A program made the translations under genes and the position numbers. Below the pieces are notes generated by a model. That model saw only the letters and a program-made list of their open reading frames with translations, searched no databases and was not told where the DNA came from. A stretch of 63,768 bases of DNA, filler included, from Octopus bimaculoides (Eukaryota): NCBI RefSeq assembly GCF_001194135.2. It is 6 parts of 6 records of this genome, joined end to end, with 100 filler letters (N's around TTAATTAATTAA, not from the genome) between each part and the next. Parts side by side here need not be neighbours in the genome. Positions count along the whole stretch, not along the records: positions 17,687 to 25,277 come from NC_068989.1; 5 more parts are not named here. The stretch is one strand, 5' to 3'. This document shows positions 17,587-25,377 of this stretch, piece by piece. Each line of letters starts with the position of its first letter. Within the stretch, counting starts at the first letter, position 1.

Positions 17587-17760
17587 NNNNNNNNNNNNNN
17601 NNNNNNNNNNNNNNNNNNNNNNNNNNNNNNTTAATTAATTAANNNNNNNNNNNNNNNNNNNNNNNNNNNNNNNNNNNNNNNNNNNNTATATACAGACATA
17701 TATATACATATAAGTTTATATATATATATAGATAGATATACAGACATATATATACACATA

Positions 17761-18156
17761 TACTCTTTACTCTTTTACTTGTTTCAGTCATTTGACTGCG
17801 GCCATGCTGGAGCACCGCCTTTAGTCGAGCAAATAAACCCCAGGACCTATTCTTTGGAAGCCTAGTACTTATTCTATCGGTCTCTTTTGACGAACCGCTA
17901 AGTTACGGTGACGTAAACACACCACCATTAGTTGTCAAGCAGTGTTGGGGGGACAAACAGACACACAAACACACATATATATATACATATACATATATAT
18001 GATGGGCTTCTTTCAGTTTCCGTCTACCAAATCCTCTCACAAGGCTTTGGTCGGCCCGAGGCTACAGTAGAAGACACTTGCCCAAGGTGCCATGCAGTGG
18101 GACTGAACCAGGAACCATGTTGTTGGTAAGCAAGCTACTTACCACACAGCCACTCC
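17761..18156 (-). mobile_element. Full-length tRNA/CORE-like SINE type S1
   Basis: Head GGAGTGGCTGTGTGGTAAG...GGTTCAGTCCC; CCTTGGGCAAGTGTCTTCTAC; tail TGACTGAAACAAGTAAAAGAG. Confidence 0.9.
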
Positions 18157-18171
18157 TATATATATATATAA

Positions 18172-18455
18172 ATCGTGAAGTATATTTGCCACCTAAATGT
18201 AGCTAACCTTTAAGGGTTGATGATACTGTGGCTTGTAGCCCCAGGAAGACATATCCTCCAGTTGTCTATTGACACACTTTCTGTGCCCTATCAGTATTTG
18301 CAAAGGGAAGTCAACTTTCCCATCTCCAGCCTGGCGTGATACACACGGACCCGAGTTTCTGGGTACTGACCCATCATCAGCATGTGACAACCACCGTTTT
18401 TCTTTATTATGATAATAATTATCTATTATGAAGGACAATACAAGACGTTACAAAC
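18172..18455 (-). repeat. Repeat R, copy at the 3' end of LINE A (TGTAACG...AATAAA...hammerhead...CACGAT)
   Basis: Reverse complement aligns along its length with 23470-23756 (roughly 80-85% identity by eye). The ORF track shows homologous spurious peptides in both. Confidence 0.95.
18336..18394 (-). ncRNA. Minimal type I hammerhead ribozyme
   Basis: Minus reads GTGGT-TGT-CACATG CTGATGA TGGGT-CAGT-ACCCA GAAA C-TCGG-GTC / CGTGTG-T-ATCAC. All core nucleotides, stems I and II and a 2-bp stem III are present. Predicted GUC cleavage between 18348 and 18347. Confidence 0.85.
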
Positions 18456-18577
18456 ATATAAATGTGTTAAGTGAGTTTATATTTAAAAATTCAATGAATC
18501 ATATATATAAATTTTTAATTTTCACAAAATATGGCTGGAATGCCAGCGACGACACCTCGCTTATACCATAGGTGGAA

Positions 18578-21500
18578 TTAAGTAGGAACAGTCACTCCCA
18601 ACTTTCTCATGACATCATTCTATCTTCTCTCATATATACTTCACAACAGATATCTTTTCTCCAGCCCTATCTTGCTCTTCAGATGGTACTTAAAGTAGAA
18701 TAGCAACCCAGGGCTGGAGATGAAGGATCCTGTCATGATTCTTTGCATTCTGGTTCTCCATACACACTCTTTCATTACTGCGACTGTACACAGAAAACAT
18801 GCATCACCTTCCTTTCATAGTCCAGTTGGTGATACAATCTTTATCAGACTCAGCTGATAGCTTGTACTCTTCACAGGTGCGACAACACATGTTCTACATA
18901 AATTATCAAGCCTGAAAGCTCTGGACACTGTACAAGAGCGTGCAGGACAGTTTCATCATCCTGTCCATGCCTTAGGCATGTCGGTGGCTCTGATATTCCG
19001 TGCCTGGACAATTTATCGCGGACACGTAACACATCCCTGTAACACTGCCATGTCAGGGTTCTTTGGTAATTATCCAAATACCCCGACCTAAAGGTTTTTT
19101 GAAACCGGTTGGCTAGCTGGTTCTCATTGAACCCCAGAGCCTCTCTTAGGACGTCATCACTCTTATACCCTACCATCCCATTATAAAATACAGACATGGT
19201 ATTCCCGCTGCTGGCCTTGCCCGCCCTGTGGATTAGTGCAAGTGCCTTTCAGCATTCTTTTTGCCATTCAGTCATATTCTGTCTTTTAATCAAATCAGGT
19301 GTAAATTCCTCCAAGAGGGCCGGTCATGGAAAGAATTCCTCTGCAAGCGAATTCCACACTTGGCCACCGTCCAGATAGAGCCAGAGATGACTTAGCCTCA
19401 ATGCATGCCTGCACATCAATAGCTACGTCATCCCTAACCTACCCTTTAGTGGTTCTTGGCAGCATACGGAGCACCTCACAAGCGCCTTTCCAGACCAGGT
19501 CCAGACTAGGGCCTCCAACCTGCCTCCCACCTTACTCCAATTCTTCTCTGTCTGGGAATCTGGTCCAAACCAAACTCCAAGCAACTTAACAGGACCATCC
19601 ATCCAGTGACCCACGACACTAGACATTATTGGTTTGCTGCTCCAGGTGCCGAGCCGCAAACTAATGGACTCAGCTTGTTAACTTTTGCCCCTGCTACTGT
19701 CTCGTATCCATTGATTGCATCCTCTACAAAAGGTAACTGAGCTACATTAGACACGGTGATGGTGACATCATTCGCATATGCAGAAACAGACTTACCACAT
19801 CCGAATTCATTAGGGATGCCTGCCAAACTCTTCAATGTCTGCAGCAATGTCTCAAGAGTTAGTACATACAAAAGTGGAGACAGCGGGCAACCTTGATGAA
19901 CCAAGCGCTTGATCTCAAAAGGCTACAACAGGTAACGGTTTATTTGGACTGTGGATTTGGTGCTACCATAAATAGCCTTGATCCATCCGTGGAAGTCCAA
20001 GCCTAGCCCAGCCACCTCAAGGACTGCCGCCAGGTACTGCTGGTCTGCCATATTGAAAGCTTTACTTTGGTCTAAATGGATCAATGCCTCACCTTTACCG
20101 GATACTTTAGCCACTGTGTCTAAGGTGTAGTGTAAGAGATGAAGATTGTCCTGGATTGACCTGCCTGGGATGGCACATGTCTGCGCCTTCCCTACAAGTT
20201 TCTCCACGACATGCATCAACCTTTTTGCTAACAACTTGGCCAAAATCTTTAACTCTACATTGAGTTATGGGCCTAAAATTACGGATATGATCCCCCTTGC
20301 TCAGGTTTTTTCTGATCAGTGTCACCACTCACTGACTCAAAGAGCTGGGAATCCTCCCATTCTGCTGTCAGTTTGTGTAGACACAGGCCAGCAAGTGTCC
20401 AAACAAGCCCAGCATACTACGATAAAATTCACAGGGTGGACGATCCAGCCCCGGTGACTTGTCCCCGGCGCATTCAGCCAGCACCTCCTCGACCTCTGCA
20501 ACTGTAATCGGCCCTTCACAACATTTCGCCTTCCGCCCCAAGAGTCATCGCCGGCTGGCAAGCATGTCCTTTAGGGACTCCCCACGGTCCAGCGAACCAC
20601 TCGTCCCAAACAGCCGGGCGAAATGTTGGTTAAAAATTCCTTTGCACCTCCCTTCTGTCCTTTGATCGAATGGCCCTATTCGTCAATCAAAGACTTTATA
20701 GAGGTTTCACTGTCTCTCTTACTTTCCACATGTTGTGCCCATCCAGCAACGTTAATACCTTCTCTACCCACTGCATGTAACTTAGCCCTGACTCTACACC
20801 CTTCGTGTTTGGCTTTGAGACGACAGAATAACACCGCTCTCACCACTTTCACTCTGGATGAAGAGCCAGATTCCATGGCCTCCTCTAATTCCTTAATTAG
20901 ATTTCTTTCTATTCTATTCTTCTCTAAACTTAGCTGGTTACTAAATCTAAGAGACTCAGAACGAATGGCTCACTTGAGGGAGCACCACTGTCTGTTATTA
21001 ATGATGGTGCCACATAATGCTCTCAGCACTAACTCCTTAACTCGGGTACGGAAGGTTTTACAAGTCAAAATAGACTTCATCTTCCAGTACCCTGGTCCCT
21101 GTCTATGACACTTAACTAGGTACACCTCACATGTCACAAATTTGTGATCCATGTAAGATACACAACAAAAGCATGAACAACTAACCGTATTCCTATCTCT
21201 CTCTCTAACGAATATCCTATCTAAATAAGATCTGTATGAAGGGTCGTTATTAGTCCACATCCACTGCAGAATGAGCAGTTCATCCAGTCTATATCGGTCT
21301 ACTAGGTTATAGCTCTCTAGTAGCCTTTTAAGGCCAGGACTTCCCCTTCTATCAATCAAGGCAACACTATCCACCCCTGCGTCGAGAATAGTGTTAAAGT
21401 CTCCTGCTAAAACTAGAGTTTATGATGTCACCAGAAAGCTCTCCAGGTCTCGAAAAAAACCTGCTTGTCTACACTCACTAGGAGTGTAAACAGGCACCAA

Positions 21501-21814
21501 CCTGAAAGACTGCTTACTTGCATGTGTCACATCTAGGACAACCAACCTACCTTCTGGGTCCAGAAAGACTGTACTTACCTGTACATCCAAGTAATTTCTG
21601 AACAATACCACCACACCCCCGCCTCCTCATCAACTAGGAGAAATGAATTTCTCATAGCCATTTAGAAGAGGCGAGAAAGCCTGTGGCCCATTCAGCTTGG
21701 ACTCGATCACCACACATATATCAATTTCTAGTGACCTGAGGTCAACCAGGAGACACGTTTGCTTCCATTTCGACCCCAGGCCATGAACATTTTTACACCT
21801 AACTTAATTTCCAT
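18578..21814 (-). pseudogene. L1/Tx1 ORF2 (AP endonuclease, reverse transcriptase, C-terminal Cys/His motif), multiply frameshifted
   Basis: Motifs MEIKLGV.NV.GL, AGDFN, SYRSYLDRIF, GPGYWK, RNFRPIT, LDQSKAF, QGCPLSPLLYVL, AYA(N)DVT, KLLGVWF, C......ETVLHALVQC. Confidence 0.92.
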
Positions 21815-22068
21815 GGTAAAAATAAAGAAACTTACATTCTGAGTATGGGGAGATGCTGCATAAATTCGCCAACCTCTCCCTCCTTTTCTTTCTGAGGGTA
21901 TCTCACTTTAGATTGTTCTAATAGGTCTCCTTCTATCCTTGCCAACCGTATATTTGGTGGCATACCTTGTATTGGTTGTAAAATATGCTATTATTTATGC
22001 GCAGTTACTATTCTCACTAGAACATCATTTTCTTATTTTACTTCACAATCCTTTCTTCTAGTGCATTT

Positions 22069-23048
22069 TTAGGGGGAGGGGTGACGGGTTTCGACTTGGG
22101 GGTGGATTGGGGAGTTTTTCTGTGTGTTTGCATTTTGTGTAGATATTTTCTTTGTCAGGGAAGGAGAGTCTGGAGCATGGGCTTTTTGTCTTTTATATGA
22201 AGTCACTGTGGTAAATTCCATTTCCTCTTCGGCTTTTTTCTGTTGTGTGTTTTCTACGTTTTGTTTATTCCTTTCTTCCTCTTTTCCTGTCAAGCTTTCT
22301 TGTTACTTTCTTTTTGGGGAGGGACTTAAGCCTTTTTCTGTTGTTTTTACTTTTTCGCACTCCGAATGGACATGCCATTTTCCTCCACATTTAAAACATC
22401 TGGGTCTGTGTCTCTCGACTGATACTCTAATGCTCAGTCCCTCCCCAATAAAAATGCAGTCTGGCCTTGATTCGAGCACGACGTTTGAGGCTTGAACCAT
22501 CATCTCAAGAGTTTGGTCTTTCCAGTTTAGAGCGTCTCTCTTTTCCATGTAGCAAATTGTTATCTCCTCCTCTGCGTCGTAAATTACAGCTGCTGCCATC
22601 CATGTTACATAACCAGCTGAAATTTCCTCTATAGTTATTTTTGCAGTTCTCCGGCCTAGGTAGGTCGGGAGCAACATTATGTCATCACTTTTTAGAGTTT
22701 GGGTAGTTATTTCTTTTGCTGTTTCAACATTCTCGAATTGCACCTCAATAGTGGCGTTTGTTGCTCCTCAACCGACATAGATACTTTTTCCACATATGGG
22801 GGCGAGGCACTTTTCTACCACCTTGTTCTTCATTGACATAATTCTTTTTTTATTCCGTTATATATTTTGTAGACTACCGTTCTGGCAGTTAAATTCTGTA
22901 ACATATCCTGTTGTGGCAACAGTTTTGTTTCGTTGCCACTTTTTTTGATAAGGTTTTTAATCTTAAATACTTGTTCCTTCGACACCTCCAATTCACAAAA
23001 ATTACCACCAACAGAAACTGGGTTTTTCCCTTTCTTCTTGGTTACCAA
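22069..23048 (-). pseudogene. L1/Tx1 ORF1 (gag-like, zinc knuckle), disrupted
   Basis: RPRCFKCGGKWHVHSEC knuckle; basic/acidic C-terminal tail with EFTTV..KR; positioned upstream of ORF2. Confidence 0.85.
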
Positions 23049-23469
23049 CTTGGTTACTTTCTTTCATTGCCAATAAATCCTCAGTTGAGAACAGAAATTC
23101 AATATTCGAAAGCAAATTCAATTCCATTTTTACAAATGGCCTCCAAATTCCACAAGAAAAATTGTAAATATTTTTGTCAAAAATGACAAAAATTAATTTT
23201 TTATCCTGCAACAGGTACCAAACAGTCCAAAAAGTTGTGCAAAAATCAATTTTCCACCCCGTAGGGCAAAATTTTTTGTCAAAATGACAACAACAGTTCA
23301 ATTTCAACAAGAGTTCAAATGTAACAATTTCAACAGAAAAATCAACAACAAAAATACATTAACCAAATAAACTCACTGAGCAACAGCAACCGAACGCAGA
23401 AGAGTGACAAACATCGGTTGGTGATGGTAAGTGATTTTCAATGCAAATATATATATACTATATATATAC

Positions 23470-23756
23470 GTTTTGTAACGTCCTGCATTGTCCTTCTTTG
23501 TAATAGTTAATTATTATCATAATAAAGAAATCGGTGATTGTCACACGCTGATGATAGGTCAATACCCAGAAACTCGAGTCTGTGTGTATCACATCAGGCT
23601 GGCGATGGGAAAGATGACTTCCCTTTGAAAATACTAATAGGGCATAGAAAATGTGTCAATAGCCAGCTGGAGGAGATGTCTTCCTGGGGCTACAAGCTAC
23701 AGTACCATCGACCCTTAAGTGTAAGTCACATTTAAGTGGCAAATATACTTCACGAT
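23470..23756 (+). repeat. Repeat R, copy upstream of LINE B 5' UTR
   Basis: Starts GTTTTGTAACG; AATAAA at 23521-23526; hammerhead at 23534-23592. Confidence 0.95.
23534..23592 (+). ncRNA. Minimal type I hammerhead ribozyme with palindromic stem III
   Basis: GTGAT-TGT-CACACG CTGATGA TAGGT-CAAT-ACCCA GAA ACTCGAGT C / TGTGTG-T-ATCAC. Predicted cleavage after C23580; one A.C mismatch in stem II. Confidence 0.85.
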
Positions 23757-25377
23757 GTCATTCAGTTACTGTTTATACCTCGCTCAGTGATTTATTATTG
23801 CTTGTTTCCACTTTTTCGAGATCAGTGACTTTTTGTCACTGGAAAAAGTATATATATATTTGCATTGAGAACCACTTCCCATTGCCAACTGGTGCTCATC
23901 ACTCTTCTGTGTTCGGCTGCAGTTGTTTAGTGAGATTATTGGGTTAATGGATTTTTGCTGTTGTTCAATTATCTGTTGTTACGTTTGATCGCTTGTTGGA
24001 ATTGAACTGTCGTCATCGTTTTCNNNNNNNNNNNNNNNNNNNNNNNNNNNNNNNNNNNNNNNNNNNNNNNNNNNNNNNNNNNNNNNNNNNNNNNNNNNNN
24101 NNNNNNNNNNNNNNNNNNNNNNNNNNNNNNNNNNNNNNNNNNNNNNNNNNNNNNNNNNNNNNNNNNNNNNNNNNNNNNNNNNNNNNNNNNNNNNNNNNNN
24201 NNNNNNNNNNNNNNNNNNNNNNNNNNNNNNNNNNNNNNNNNNNNNNNNNNNNNNNNNNNNNNNNNNNNNNNNNNNNNNNNNNNNNNNNNNNNNNNNNNNN
24301 NNNNNNNNNNNNNNNNNNNNNNNNNNNNNNNNNNNNNNNNNNNNNNNNNNNNNNNNNNNNNNNNNNNNNNNNNNNNNNNNNNNNNNNNNNNNNNNNNNNN
24401 NNNNNNNNNNNNNNNNNNNNNNNNNNNNNNNNNNNNNNNNNNNNNNNNNNNNNNNNNNNNNNNNNNNNNNNNNNNNNNNNNNNNNNNNNNNNNNNNNNNN
24501 NNNNNNNNNNNNNNNNNNNNNNNNNNNNNNNNNNNNNNNNNNNNNNNNNNNNNNNNNNNNATACAACCGTAAAGAAAAAACAATTATATCAGTGAAGAAC
24601 GAGATGGTAGAAAAGCGCCTCGCCCCCATATGGGGAAAAATTACCTATGTCGGTCAAGGCCAAGACACACCACTGTTGAGGCACAATTTGAGAATGCTGA
24701 AACAGCAAAAGAAATGTTGCCGCAAACTCTAAAAAGTGATGAGATAATATTGCTCCCGACCTACCTAGGCCAGAGAACCGCAAAAATAACAGTAGAGGAA
24801 ATACCATCTGGTTACGGTGTAACATGGATGGCAGCGGCCGTAAATTACTACGCAGAAGAAGAAATAACAATACTCCAAATGAAAAAGCGAGAGGCTCTAA
24901 ACTGGTAAGGTCAAACTCTTGAGATGATGGTTGAAGCCTCAAATGATGTGCTCGAATCAAGGCTAGACTGCATTTTTATATGGGAGGGACTGAGCATTAG
25001 AGTATCAGTCGAGAGACACAGACCCAGATATTTTAAATGTGGAGAAAAAAGGCAAAAAGGTTGCCGCGTGTCGTGGAGAAACTTGTAGGGAAGGCGCAGA
25101 CATGAGCCATCCCAGGCAGGTCAATCCAGGACAATCTTCATCTCTTACGCTACACCTTAGATACGGTGGGCAAAGTATCCGGTAAAGGTGGAGCATTTGT
25201 CCATTTAGACCAAAGTAAAACTTTCGATAGGATTGACCAGTAGTACATGGCGGCAGTCCTTGTGGTGGCTGGGCTAGNNNNNNNNNNNNNNNNNNNNNNN
25301 NNNNNNNNNNNNNNNNNNNNNTTAATTAATTAANNNNNNNNNNNNNNNNNNNNNNNNNNNNNNNNNNNNNNNNNNNN

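What the first reader, a model, noticed from the sequence alone, without database searches (positions are those of the whole stretch)
18172..23845. L1/Tx1-clade LINE family bounded by a hammerhead-bearing ~285-bp repeat (pseudo-LTR or ribozyme-processed tandem array)
Seen: repeat R follows the ORF2 stop and ~120-bp 3' UTR of copy A in sense (minus). A second R lies in sense ~85 bp upstream of the 5' UTR of copy B (plus). R has the order LINE 3' end, AATAAA, hammerhead, ~175 bp more. Established: L1/Tx1 elements normally end in poly(A) or a simple tail. Ribozymes reported in APE- or RLE-type LINEs (R2, RTE, L1Tc) are HDV-like, whereas minimal hammerheads in terminal repeats are characteristic of Penelope-like elements and retrozymes. 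I am not aware of an APE-RT LINE with hammerhead terminal repeats. Inference, three models: (a) R is a terminal direct repeat; (b) the family builds head-to-tail arrays and the ribozyme cuts read-through RNA into monomers; (c) a target-specific Tx1 inserts at a fixed site in a hammerhead-bearing repeat.
Basis: partly seen in the sequence, partly recalled or inferred. Interest (0 to 1): 0.92.

Follow-up and report, generated by a model that had tools for sequence, protein, structure and literature searches.

The report
LINE tail carrying a hammerhead-like motif
The ~285-bp "repeat" is most likely just the 3' end of an octopus-type LINE retrotransposon, seen once on a full-length copy and once as a severely 5'-truncated copy; that 3' end unusually includes a hammerhead-ribozyme-like motif, but nothing here shows terminal repeats or ribozyme processing.

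Summary
Two copies of a 283/285-bp sequence R are 88% identical (18172-18454 minus strand; 23472-23756 plus strand). R1 carries a structurally complete minimal type-I hammerhead motif; R2 has one helix II mismatch. Rfam calls neither. The "bounded by" reading does not hold. Copy A has R in sense only at its 3' end, and the R upstream of it is antisense. There are no tandem arrays. Two cephalopod relatives of this APE-RT-zf LINE end at ...AATAAAGAAATC, one proven by a 17-bp target-site duplication. That motif lies inside R at about position 60, and 3'UTR homology to the relatives runs across R's 5' edge. So R is the last ~60 nt of the LINE plus a ~225-nt hammerhead module H. R2 is best read as a 5'-truncated LINE copy in the same (TA)n tract, lying upstream of copy B by coincidence. 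(TA)n flanks [LINE A+R1] and [R2+90 bp], so H appears to travel inside the retrotransposed unit, probably captured from a Penelope/retrozyme-type element. Hammerhead activity and function are untested. No other R copy could be fetched, so the genome-wide test remains undone.

The parts
18157..18170 (.). (TA)7 tract abutting the 3' end of R1. Candidate target-site duplication or tail of the [LINE A + R1] insertion.
   Evidence: Sequence; compared with the (TA) tract at copy A's 5' end.
18172..18454 (-). R1: the 3'-terminal 283 nt of the copy A unit, made of the last ~60 nt of LINE 3'UTR plus module H.
   Evidence: 88% identical to R2; contiguous with the copy A 3'UTR; homology to relatives' 3'UTRs crosses its 5' edge.
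18397..18408 (-). AATAAAGAAAAA: degenerate copy of the clade's 3'-terminal motif AATAAAGAAATC, marking the ancestral LINE terminus.
   Evidence: Relatives end at this motif: L001 has a 17-bp target-site duplication right after it, and L002 has (ATT)n right after it.
18342..18386 (-). Hammerhead-like motif in R1: helix I CACAUG/CGUGUG, CUGAUGA, helix II UGGGU/ACCCA, GAA, helix III AC/GU with loop UCGG. Predicted cleavage is after the C at 18348.
   Evidence: Own descriptor scan and shuffles; folding; no Rfam hit.
18172..18394 (-). Module H in R1 (~223 nt): the hammerhead motif plus ~170 nt of unknown origin, lying downstream of the ancestral LINE terminus.
   Evidence: Absent from the 3' ends of relatives L001 and L002.
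18455..23446 (-). LINE copy A body. The 5'UTR starts TTTGCATTGA. ORF1 runs from about 22839 to 22303 and has a CCHC knuckle. ORF2 runs from about 21814 to 18515 with APE, RT and zf-RVT domains. The copy is a pseudogene with at least 3 frameshifts and several stops.
23447..23470 (.). (TA)5C(TA)5C tract between the 5' end of copy A and the 5' edge of R2.
23472..23756 (+). R2: best read as a 5'-truncated LINE copy (last ~60 nt of 3'UTR plus H). Its junction with the TA tract shows microhomology (TATAYG-TTTGTAACG).
23521..23532 (+). AATAAAGAAATC: exact copy of the clade's 3'-terminal motif, and the only exact match in the piece.
23542..23586 (+). Hammerhead-like motif in R2. The core is intact, helix II has an A.C mismatch, and the helix III region ACUCGAGU is a perfect palindrome.
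23757..23846 (+). X90: 90 bp present only after R2, ending in the hairpin CAGTGAC-TTTTT-GTCACTG and GGAAAAAG. It lies between R2 and the next (TA)7, so it appears to be inside the R2 insertion unit. Its origin is unexplained.
   Evidence: no significant match elsewhere in the piece or in L001.
23849..23862 (.). (TA)7 tract between X90 and the 5' end of copy B.
23863..25277 (+). LINE copy B, with the same 5' terminus as A. It has an assembly gap at 24024-24560 and an internal ~2.1-kb deletion that joins ORF1 to RT at about 25052-25054. It runs off the piece.
   Evidence: Inverted-repeat arms I1, I2, I4, I5, I6, 84-90% identical to copy A.

Best explanation
R is not a terminal repeat. It is the 3' end of a cephalopod APE-RT-zf (L1/Tx1-like) LINE family, and it appears twice in this piece. 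R1 is the 3' end of full-length pseudogene copy A. R2 is an independent, severely 5'-truncated copy of about 285 bp plus a 90-bp extra tail. R2 landed in the same (TA)n tract and so lies, by coincidence, between the 5' ends of copies A and B.

Within R, the first ~60 nt are native LINE 3'UTR ending at the clade's conserved terminus AATAAAGAAATC. The remaining ~225 nt (module H) are a lineage-specific addition that begins with a minimal type-I hammerhead motif of the Penelope/retrozyme style.

Inferred, not shown:
- H was a fragment of a hammerhead-bearing, (TA)n-inserting element sitting just downstream of a master LINE copy.
- It was taken up by read-through (3' transduction), with reverse transcription priming in the downstream (TA)n.
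- It is now carried by this LINE subfamily.
- The hammerhead is probably a passenger. As a single minimal motif it is expected to be poorly active, and it is already decaying in R2.
For: 1. Domains: Exo_endo_phos, RVT_1 and zf-RVT. The closest proteins are cephalopod LINE ORF2s at 43-47% identity.
2. Relatives define the ancestral 3' terminus. The Argonauta element in L001 ends ...GGCTAATAAAGAAATC and is bounded by the 17-bp target-site duplication TATTTTTAAAATTTGTA. The JGI contig L002 ends ...GGCCAATAAAAGAAATC followed by (ATT)n.
3. The same 12-mer occurs exactly once in the piece, in sense, at R2 positions 50-61.
4. Local alignment of the copy A 3'UTR plus the start of R1 to the relatives' 3'UTRs spans the R 5' boundary (p about 0.01 against dinucleotide shuffles). 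R's 5' edge is therefore a truncation point, not an element boundary.
5. (TA)n flanks [LINE A+R1] (23447-23470 and 18157-18170) and [R2+X90] (23447-23470 and 23849-23862). No duplication is visible at the AATAAAGAAATC|GGTG junction. H therefore lies inside the transposed unit.
6. The LINE/H junction is identical in both copies, as expected from common descent.
7. No hammerhead is found in 29 kb of relatives' loci L001-L004, so H is a recent addition.
8. R1 and R2 differ at 5 of 45 hammerhead positions, the same rate as R overall (12%). One of these changes breaks helix II, so no purifying selection is detectable.
Against: Only two R copies and one complete LINE 3' end are available, and no other genomic copy could be fetched. 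The 3'UTR homology across the R boundary is modest and AT-rich (p about 0.01; not significant against Argonauta unit 2). TA repeats are so common here that the 'TA on both sides' argument is weak as a target-site duplication. X90 is unexplained, since copy A lacks it. If this clade's RT normally initiates exactly at ...GAAATC, as the Argonauta duplication suggests, copying of H needs a changed initiation site. The identical junction is equally expected from site-specific insertion.
Confidence: 0.55

Rival explanations
1. Target-specific insertion. H is an independent (TA)n-flanked hammerhead element, either a solo retrozyme or a Penelope-derived fragment. This Tx1-like LINE inserts at a fixed site immediately 5' of it. 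Copy A would be a full-length insertion and R2 a 60-nt 5'-truncated insertion into two different H copies.
For: The LINE terminus joins H at the same nucleotide in both copies. The relatives' RT initiates exactly at ...GAAATC, so H would be target DNA. All three LINE 5' ends abut (TA)n. From general knowledge, Tx1-group LINEs are often sequence-specific.
Against: No part of an H-bearing target is seen 5' of any LINE copy, only (TA)n. There is no duplication at the junction, although the Argonauta relative makes a 17-bp duplication in ordinary AT-rich DNA and is not site-specific. The model needs two independent events at one nucleotide, where shared descent needs one.
Confidence: 0.17
2. R is an independent short non-autonomous element, a hammerhead-bearing SINE or solo retrozyme. 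It inserted into TA repeats beside LINE copies by chance, because both kinds of element nest in (TA)n.
For: Both R copies have the same 5' and 3' ends and are flanked by TA-like sequence. R's size (283-285 bp) and GC content (40-42%) fit non-LTR retrozyme monomers (PMC7229834). Penelope-like elements favour (TA)n and form inverted pairs (PMC8557442). Removing copy A would leave R1 and R2 head-to-head around a TA tract.
Against: The clade's 3'-terminal motif lies inside R, and the 3'UTR homology is continuous across R's edge. Without R1, copy A would lack its own 3' terminus. R RNA is not unusually structured (z = -0.5 and -1.5). There is no tandem array, and no tRNA-like head.
Confidence: 0.1
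3. Functional ribozyme architecture. R acts as a pseudo-LTR or array spacer, and its hammerhead trims read-through or tandem transcripts into unit-length LINE RNA.
For: R2 lies in sense about 100 bp upstream of copy B, and R1 lies in sense at copy A's 3' end. The helix III region is palindromic, so two R copies on one RNA could form an active dimer. The Argonauta relative carries a tandem second 3'UTR unit inside one target-site duplication, showing read-through units in the clade.
Against: Copy A has an antisense R upstream. A and B are head-to-head, not head-to-tail. (TA)7 and X90 separate R2 from copy B. Cleavage at the predicted site would remove the last ~175 nt and the tail from the RNA. 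No constraint on the motif is detectable, and Rfam finds no hammerhead.
Confidence: 0.08
4. The hammerhead resemblance is a chance motif in an AT-rich 3'UTR and has no ribozyme ancestry.
For: Rfam gives no hit at E<=10. Positions 10.1-11.1 are U-A rather than the conserved G-C. The minimum-free-energy fold of whole R does not form the motif. The descriptor was applied after the fact.
Against: Shuffles of the piece meet the strict criteria in 1 of 3000 cases and the relaxed criteria in 16 of 3000. The helix lengths (6, 4-5 and 2 bp), the 4-nt palindromic loop 3 and the extra nucleotide after A9 match the published metazoan and Penelope hammerhead architecture (PMC4209133). Two helix I differences between R1 and R2 both keep pairing.
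Confidence: 0.07

Closest known systems
5'-truncated LINE copies and LINE 3' transduction (as in L1)
   Same: A short copy shares only the 3' end with a full-length copy, shows microhomology at its 5' junction, and carries extra non-LINE sequence between the ancestral 3' terminus and the target repeat.
   Different: There is no poly(A); the flanks are (TA)n. The transduced module contains a hammerhead motif. Transduction is inferred, and the source locus has not been seen.
Tx1/L1-group APE LINEs, including the microsatellite-associated Tx1-group elements Kibi and Koshi (recalled from memory, not tested)
   Same: APE + RT + C-terminal zinc-binding domain, ORF1 with a CCHC knuckle, and copies embedded in simple repeats.
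   Different: Clade placement (Tx1 versus L1) was not tested by phylogeny. The Argonauta relative inserts in ordinary AT-rich DNA with a 17-bp duplication. None of those elements is known to me to carry a hammerhead.
Penelope-like element pseudo-LTRs with minimal hammerheads (PMC4209133, PMC8557442, PMC11167929)
   Same: Minimal type-I motif with a short, palindromic helix III, an extra nucleotide after A9, an AUG at the start of stem II with the cut site about 27 nt downstream (as reported for the Anolis Poseidon element), a (TA)n insertion context, and inverted neighbours.
   Different: The ORFs between and beside the repeats are APE/RVT_1/zf-RVT, not Penelope RT plus GIY-YIG. No single copy is flanked by direct repeats.
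Metazoan non-LTR retrozymes (PMC7229834; bioRxiv 10.64898/2026.07.22.740005)
   Same: A ~285-bp, low-GC unit with one type-I hammerhead; solo monomers are known.
   Different: There is no tandem array, the RNA is not highly self-paired, and the first 60 nt are LINE 3'UTR.
HDV-like ribozymes of R2, RTE and L1Tc LINEs (from knowledge)
   Same: A self-cleaving ribozyme motif physically part of a non-LTR retrotransposon.
   Different: Those are HDV-like folds at the 5' end that process co-transcripts. Here the motif is a hammerhead in the 3' region, with no evidence of a processing role.

Membership tests
Hammerhead ribozyme, type I (metazoan minimal/dimeric style) | Catalytic core CUGAUGA ... GAAA with a non-G nucleotide at the cleavage site | tested here: met
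   Both copies keep CUGAUGA, GAAA and C17.
Hammerhead ribozyme, type I (metazoan minimal/dimeric style) | Helices I, II and III in type-I order | tested here: met
   R1 has helices of 6, 5 and 2 bp. R2 has helix I 6 bp and helix III 2 bp, but helix II is interrupted by an A.C mismatch.
Hammerhead ribozyme, type I (metazoan minimal/dimeric style) | Conserved G10.1-C11.1 pair closing helix II | tested here: not met
   The closing pair is U-A, with G-C one step in. It can alternatively be read as the extra nucleotide after A9 typical of Penelope hammerheads plus an extra A on the 3' side.
Hammerhead ribozyme, type I (metazoan minimal/dimeric style) | Recognised by curated covariance models (Rfam hammerhead families) | tested here: not met
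   No hammerhead hit at E<=1 on the piece or E<=10 on 121-289-nt sub-windows.
Hammerhead ribozyme, type I (metazoan minimal/dimeric style) | Short helix III with a palindromic loop allowing dimeric activation | tested here: met
   The sequence is ACUCGAGU in R2 and ACUCGGGU in R1. RNAcofold of two R2 motifs forms the 8-bp intermolecular helix. Architecture as described in PMC4209133.
Hammerhead ribozyme, type I (metazoan minimal/dimeric style) | Covariation supporting the helices | tested here: inconclusive
   There are only two sequences. Two helix I changes keep pairing through wobble, and one helix II change breaks a pair.
Hammerhead ribozyme, type I (metazoan minimal/dimeric style) | Self-cleavage | not testable with these tools
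   Needs in vitro transcription of monomer and dimer constructs.
L1/Tx1-type APE LINE | ORF2 with an N-terminal APE endonuclease, an RT and a C-terminal zinc-binding motif | tested here: met
   Pfam Exo_endo_phos 2.5e-11, RVT_1 8e-16, zf-RVT 2e-7 on conceptual pieces.
L1/Tx1-type APE LINE | Phylogenetic placement of the RT within the Tx1 or L1 clade | not tested
   No reference set of classified LINE RTs was available. The nearest proteins are unnamed cephalopod ORF2s.
L1/Tx1-type APE LINE | Target-site duplication flanking the insertion | tested here: inconclusive
   (TA)n lies on both sides of [LINE A+R1] and [R2+X90], and no unique bases are available to prove a duplication. A clear 17-bp duplication is present in the Argonauta relative.
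Penelope-like element pseudo-LTR | Direct repeats flanking an ORF with Penelope-type RT and GIY-YIG endonuclease | tested here: not met
   The ORFs are APE/RVT_1/zf-RVT. Copy A has sense R only at its 3' end, and the R upstream of it is antisense.
Penelope-like element pseudo-LTR | Minimal hammerhead inside the repeat and a (TA)n insertion bias | tested here: met
   and the flanks. Features as described in PMC4209133 and PMC8557442.
Non-LTR retrozyme | Tandem array (at least a dimer) of 170-400-bp units, each with a type-I hammerhead | tested here: not met
   Tandem Repeats Finder and the repeat finder show no R array; the two copies are 5 kb apart and inverted.
Non-LTR retrozyme | Highly self-paired monomer RNA | tested here: not met
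   z-scores -0.5 (R1) and -1.5 (R2+X90) against dinucleotide shuffles.
5'-truncated LINE copy | Colinear with the 3' end of a full-length copy, including that family's native 3'UTR terminus | tested here: met
   Alignment of R2 with the copy A 3' end. The clade terminus motif lies inside R. Homology to relatives crosses R's 5' edge.

The most novel reading that the evidence does not exclude
An APE-type LINE lineage in octopods has made a hammerhead-bearing module its regular 3' end. It may share that end with short hammerhead elements (retrozyme-like SINEs), so that a LINE rather than a Penelope-like element mobilises hammerhead RNAs. Alternatively, the ribozyme may shape the LINE transcript's 3' end or process read-through transcripts.
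Probability: 0.13. Interest if true: 0.8.

Novelty: new variant of a known kind. Interest (0 to 1): 0.42.

Why it matters
Type-I hammerheads in animal genomes are currently tied to Penelope-like elements and their non-autonomous retrozymes. Ribozymes known in APE or RLE LINEs are HDV-like and sit at the 5' end. A LINE subfamily that carries a hammerhead module inside its retrotransposed unit would be the first physical link between hammerheads and an APE LINE. It would also make testable the open question, raised in PMC7229834, of whether LINEs can mobilise hammerhead or retrozyme RNAs. If the module is only a transduced passenger, as I think most likely, the locus is an ordinary example of 5' truncation plus 3' transduction in a TA-repeat insertion nest.

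Tried and rejected
- Rfam cmscan on the piece and on short sub-windows gave no hammerhead hit.
- Attempts to fetch more R copies all failed. The open frame in R has no protein homologues. Two R patterns gave 0 hits in metagenome contigs, 0 in GTDB genome contigs and 0 in viral contigs. The window's ORF1 product is not on record. A full-text search for the motif sequence found no papers.
- A retrozyme-like rod structure is rejected (z = -0.5 and -1.5).
- A tRNA-derived SINE head in R is rejected (ARAGORN found none).
- A tandem array is rejected.
- H and X90 show no significant similarity to the rest of the piece or to the relatives' 3'UTRs.
- No hammerhead was found at the 3' ends of related LINEs L001-L004. 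L005 is too short to reach its 3' terminus, and P0061 is not on record.
- No paper in the searchable library links a hammerhead to Tx1 or to LINE 3' transduction.
- One alignment (A2) included a wrong-frame sequence by my own error and was discarded.

Full report
**Anatomy of the piece (17687-25277), read on the plus strand**

- 17760-18156, minus strand: a SINE with an internal and a terminal TA/CA microsatellite.
- 18157-18170: (TA)7.
- 18172-18454, minus sense: R1.
- 18455-23446, minus strand: LINE copy A.
- 23447-23470: a (TA)5C(TA)5C tract.
- 23472-23756, plus sense: R2.
- 23757-23846: a unique 90-bp stretch (X90) ending in a perfect 7-bp hairpin.
- 23849-23862: (TA)7.
- From 23863, plus strand: LINE copy B.

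Copy B contains an assembly gap (24024-24560). It also has an internal ~2.1-kb deletion joining ORF1 to the RT region at about 25052, and it runs off the piece. Copies A and B are 84-90% identical in ORF1 and RT and 79% identical in the 5'UTR. They share the same 5' terminus, TTTGCATTGA, directly after a TA tract.

**The LINE**

Conceptual translation of copy A gives an ORF1 with a CX2CX4HX4C knuckle and no Pfam hit. ORF2 carries Exo_endo_phos, RVT_1 and zf-RVT. It is broken by at least three frameshifts and several stops.

tblastn with the best homologue, Argonauta hians P0001 (47% identity), aligns to residue 665 of 670 at window 18581. The stop is at about 18515-18517. The only relatives above 40% identity are cephalopod-type ORF2s: P0060, P0001, P0002 and P0003. 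The SINE core beside R1 matches SINE copies in the Argonauta locus at 85-93%. The source is therefore very probably an octopod. The L1/Tx1-type architecture is confirmed, but placement in Tx1 versus L1 was not tested.

**The repeat**

R1 and R2 are 283 and 285 nt long and 88% identical, with the same ends. R1 continues copy A's 3'UTR in sense, about 60 nt after the ORF2 stop. R2 lies in sense 90-106 bp upstream of copy B and antisense 12-24 bp from copy A's 5' end.

**The hammerhead motif**

In R1 the RNA reads CACAUG-CUGAUGA-UGGGU(CAGU)ACCCA-GAA-AC(UCGG)GU-C|CGUGUG. This is the type-I order, with helix I of 6 bp, helix II of 5 bp, helix III of 2 bp, and C at the cleavage site (window 18348).

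My descriptor finds it and nothing else in the piece. Shuffles of the piece meet the strict criteria in 1 of 3000 cases and relaxed criteria in 16 of 3000. The descriptor was written after the motif had been seen, so these figures are optimistic.

The architecture matches published descriptions of metazoan and Penelope hammerheads: helix I of 6 bp, helix II of about 4 bp, helix III of 1-2 bp capped by a small palindromic loop, and an extra nucleotide after A9 (PMC4209133). The helix III region is ACUCGAGU in R2, a perfect palindrome, and two R2 motifs co-fold through it. As in the Anolis Poseidon element, an AUG sits at the start of stem II, with the cut site about 27 nt downstream (PMC11167929). 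This last point is a resemblance, not a test.

Several points count against a working ribozyme:
- Rfam covariance models give no hammerhead hit, even at E<=10 on 121-289-nt windows.
- The pair closing helix II is U-A, not the conserved G10.1-C11.1.
- R2 has an A.C mismatch in helix II.
- R1 and R2 differ at 5 of 45 motif positions, the same 11-12% as the rest of R. No constraint is detectable.
- Whole-R RNA is not unusually structured (z = -0.5 and -1.5).

I conclude that this is a genuine hammerhead-type motif or relic, of unproven and probably low activity as a monomer.

**What R is**

The decisive comparison is with the 3' ends of the related LINEs. The Argonauta element in L001 is bounded by the 17-bp target-site duplication TATTTTTAAAATTTGTA and ends ...GGCTAATAAAGAAATC. 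The JGI contig L002 ends ...GGCCAATAAAAGAAATC, followed at once by (ATT)n.

The 12-mer AATAAAGAAATC occurs exactly once in the piece: in sense, at R2 positions 50-61. R1 has a two-mismatch version at the same place.

Local alignment of copy A's 3'UTR plus the start of R1 to the relatives' 3'UTRs spans R's 5' boundary. Against 500 dinucleotide shuffles, p is about 0.01 for L002 and for Argonauta unit 1. The alignment to Argonauta unit 2 is not significant.

So the first ~60 nt of R are native LINE 3'UTR, and R's 5' edge is not an element boundary. The simplest reading is that R2 is a 5'-truncated LINE copy. Its junction with the TA tract shows the microhomology typical of such copies (TATAYG-TTTGTAACG in both). 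The remaining ~225 nt (module H) lie downstream of the ancestral terminus. H has no detectable counterpart in the relatives, which also lack any hammerhead in 29 kb examined.

**Is H inside the transposed unit?**

[LINE A+R1] is flanked by TA tracts on both sides, and so is [R2+X90]. At the AATAAAGAAATC|GGTG junction there is nothing resembling the 5' flank. The clade does make long duplications, as the 17-bp Argonauta example shows. This favours H, and X90 in the case of R2, being copied together with the LINE.

The identical LINE/H junction in both copies then follows from common descent. I infer capture by read-through of a master copy that had a hammerhead-bearing, (TA)n-inserting fragment just downstream. 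Penelope-like elements carry hammerheads in their repeats and favour (TA)n (PMC8557442). Solo retrozyme monomers related to Penelope repeats are also common (bioRxiv 10.64898/2026.07.22.740005).

The Argonauta copy shows that read-through units occur in this clade. It carries a second, 5'-truncated 3'UTR unit (8421-8652, 78% identical to the first over the 58-nt repeat reported) inside the same duplication.

The argument has weak points. TA repeats are ubiquitous here, X90 is unexplained, and only one complete LINE 3' end is visible.

- (a) Terminal direct repeat: not supported, because copy A has an antisense R upstream.
- (b) Head-to-tail arrays cut by the ribozyme: not supported. A and B are head-to-head and there is no R array. 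Cleavage at the predicted site would also remove the last ~175 nt and the tail.
- (c) Site-specific insertion beside a hammerhead repeat: not excluded, since the junction is identical and the relatives' RT starts at ...GAAATC. It needs two independent events at one nucleotide, shows no duplication, and the Argonauta relative is not site-specific.
- A fully independent R element is disfavoured, because copy A would then lack its own conserved 3' terminus.

**Limits**

Every attempt to obtain further R or same-family LINE copies failed. I found no paper in the searchable library linking a hammerhead to a Tx1/L1-type LINE.

**Verdict**

The repeat and the motif are real. The "LINE bounded by hammerhead repeats" architecture is not supported. 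The best reading is a LINE subfamily whose 3' end has picked up a Penelope/retrozyme-style hammerhead module, seen once full-length and once 5'-truncated in a TA-repeat insertion nest. That is a modestly unusual variant of known processes. It would become more interesting only if the census shows that H is the regular, shared 3' end of the family, or if the ribozyme cleaves.

Noticed in passing
window 17760-18156 (minus strand): A SINE of about 400 bp with an internal (CA/TA) microsatellite and a TA-rich tail. Its core (GGGCCGACCAAAGCCTTGTGAG...GGTAGACGGAAACTGAAAGAAGC) matches three copies in the Argonauta hians locus L001 at 85-93%, which points to an octopod source genome.
   Followed up: partly
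window 23757-23846: A unique 90-bp stretch (X90) between R2 and the next (TA)7. It ends in the perfect hairpin CAGTGAC-TTTTT-GTCACTG followed by GGAAAAAG. It is absent after R1 and has no significant match in the piece or in L001. Its origin is unknown; it may be a variable 3' extension of the element.
   Followed up: partly
window 18193-18438 (minus strand) and 23538-23735 (plus strand): One reading frame through H is open for 81 codons in R1 and 65 in R2, and ends at the same stop in both. It has no Pfam hit and no homologue among 5.8 billion proteins. The copies are 80% identical at the amino-acid level against 88% at the nucleotide level, so it is probably a chance open frame.
   Followed up: partly
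window 24818-25277 (copy B): Copy B jumps from the end of ORF1 (about 25054) straight into the RT region, which is homologous to copy A at 20003-20228. This is an internal ~2.1-kb deletion that removes the APE domain. A 537-bp assembly gap (24024-24560) interrupts its 5'UTR and the start of ORF1.
   Followed up: partly
L001 2887-8652 (Argonauta hians): The related LINE is bounded by the 17-bp target-site duplication TATTTTTAAAATTTGTA. It contains two tandem 3'UTR units (8014-8300 and 8421-8652) separated by about 120 nt, so a full-length element plus a 5'-truncated 3'UTR were inserted as one unit. Its terminal block CGGCCCTTGTGGCTAATAGAGAAATCTAT also recurs in a ~250-bp tandem repeat at 11028 and 11278, which may be a SINE or satellite sharing the LINE tail.
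   Followed up: partly
protein P0061: A protein 61% identical to the Argonauta LINE ORF2 is deposited as 'MAG: zinc-binding domain-containing protein [Herbaspirillum sp.]'. This is almost certainly cephalopod or other host DNA contaminating a bacterial metagenome-assembled genome.
   Followed up: no
window 23167-23293 and 23282-23327 (copy A 5'UTR): The LINE 5'UTR contains repeated small hairpin-like units (TTTTTGTCAAAAATGACAAAAA, two copies 101 nt apart) and a 17-nt tandem repeat of 2.6 copies. Their function is unknown.
   Followed up: no
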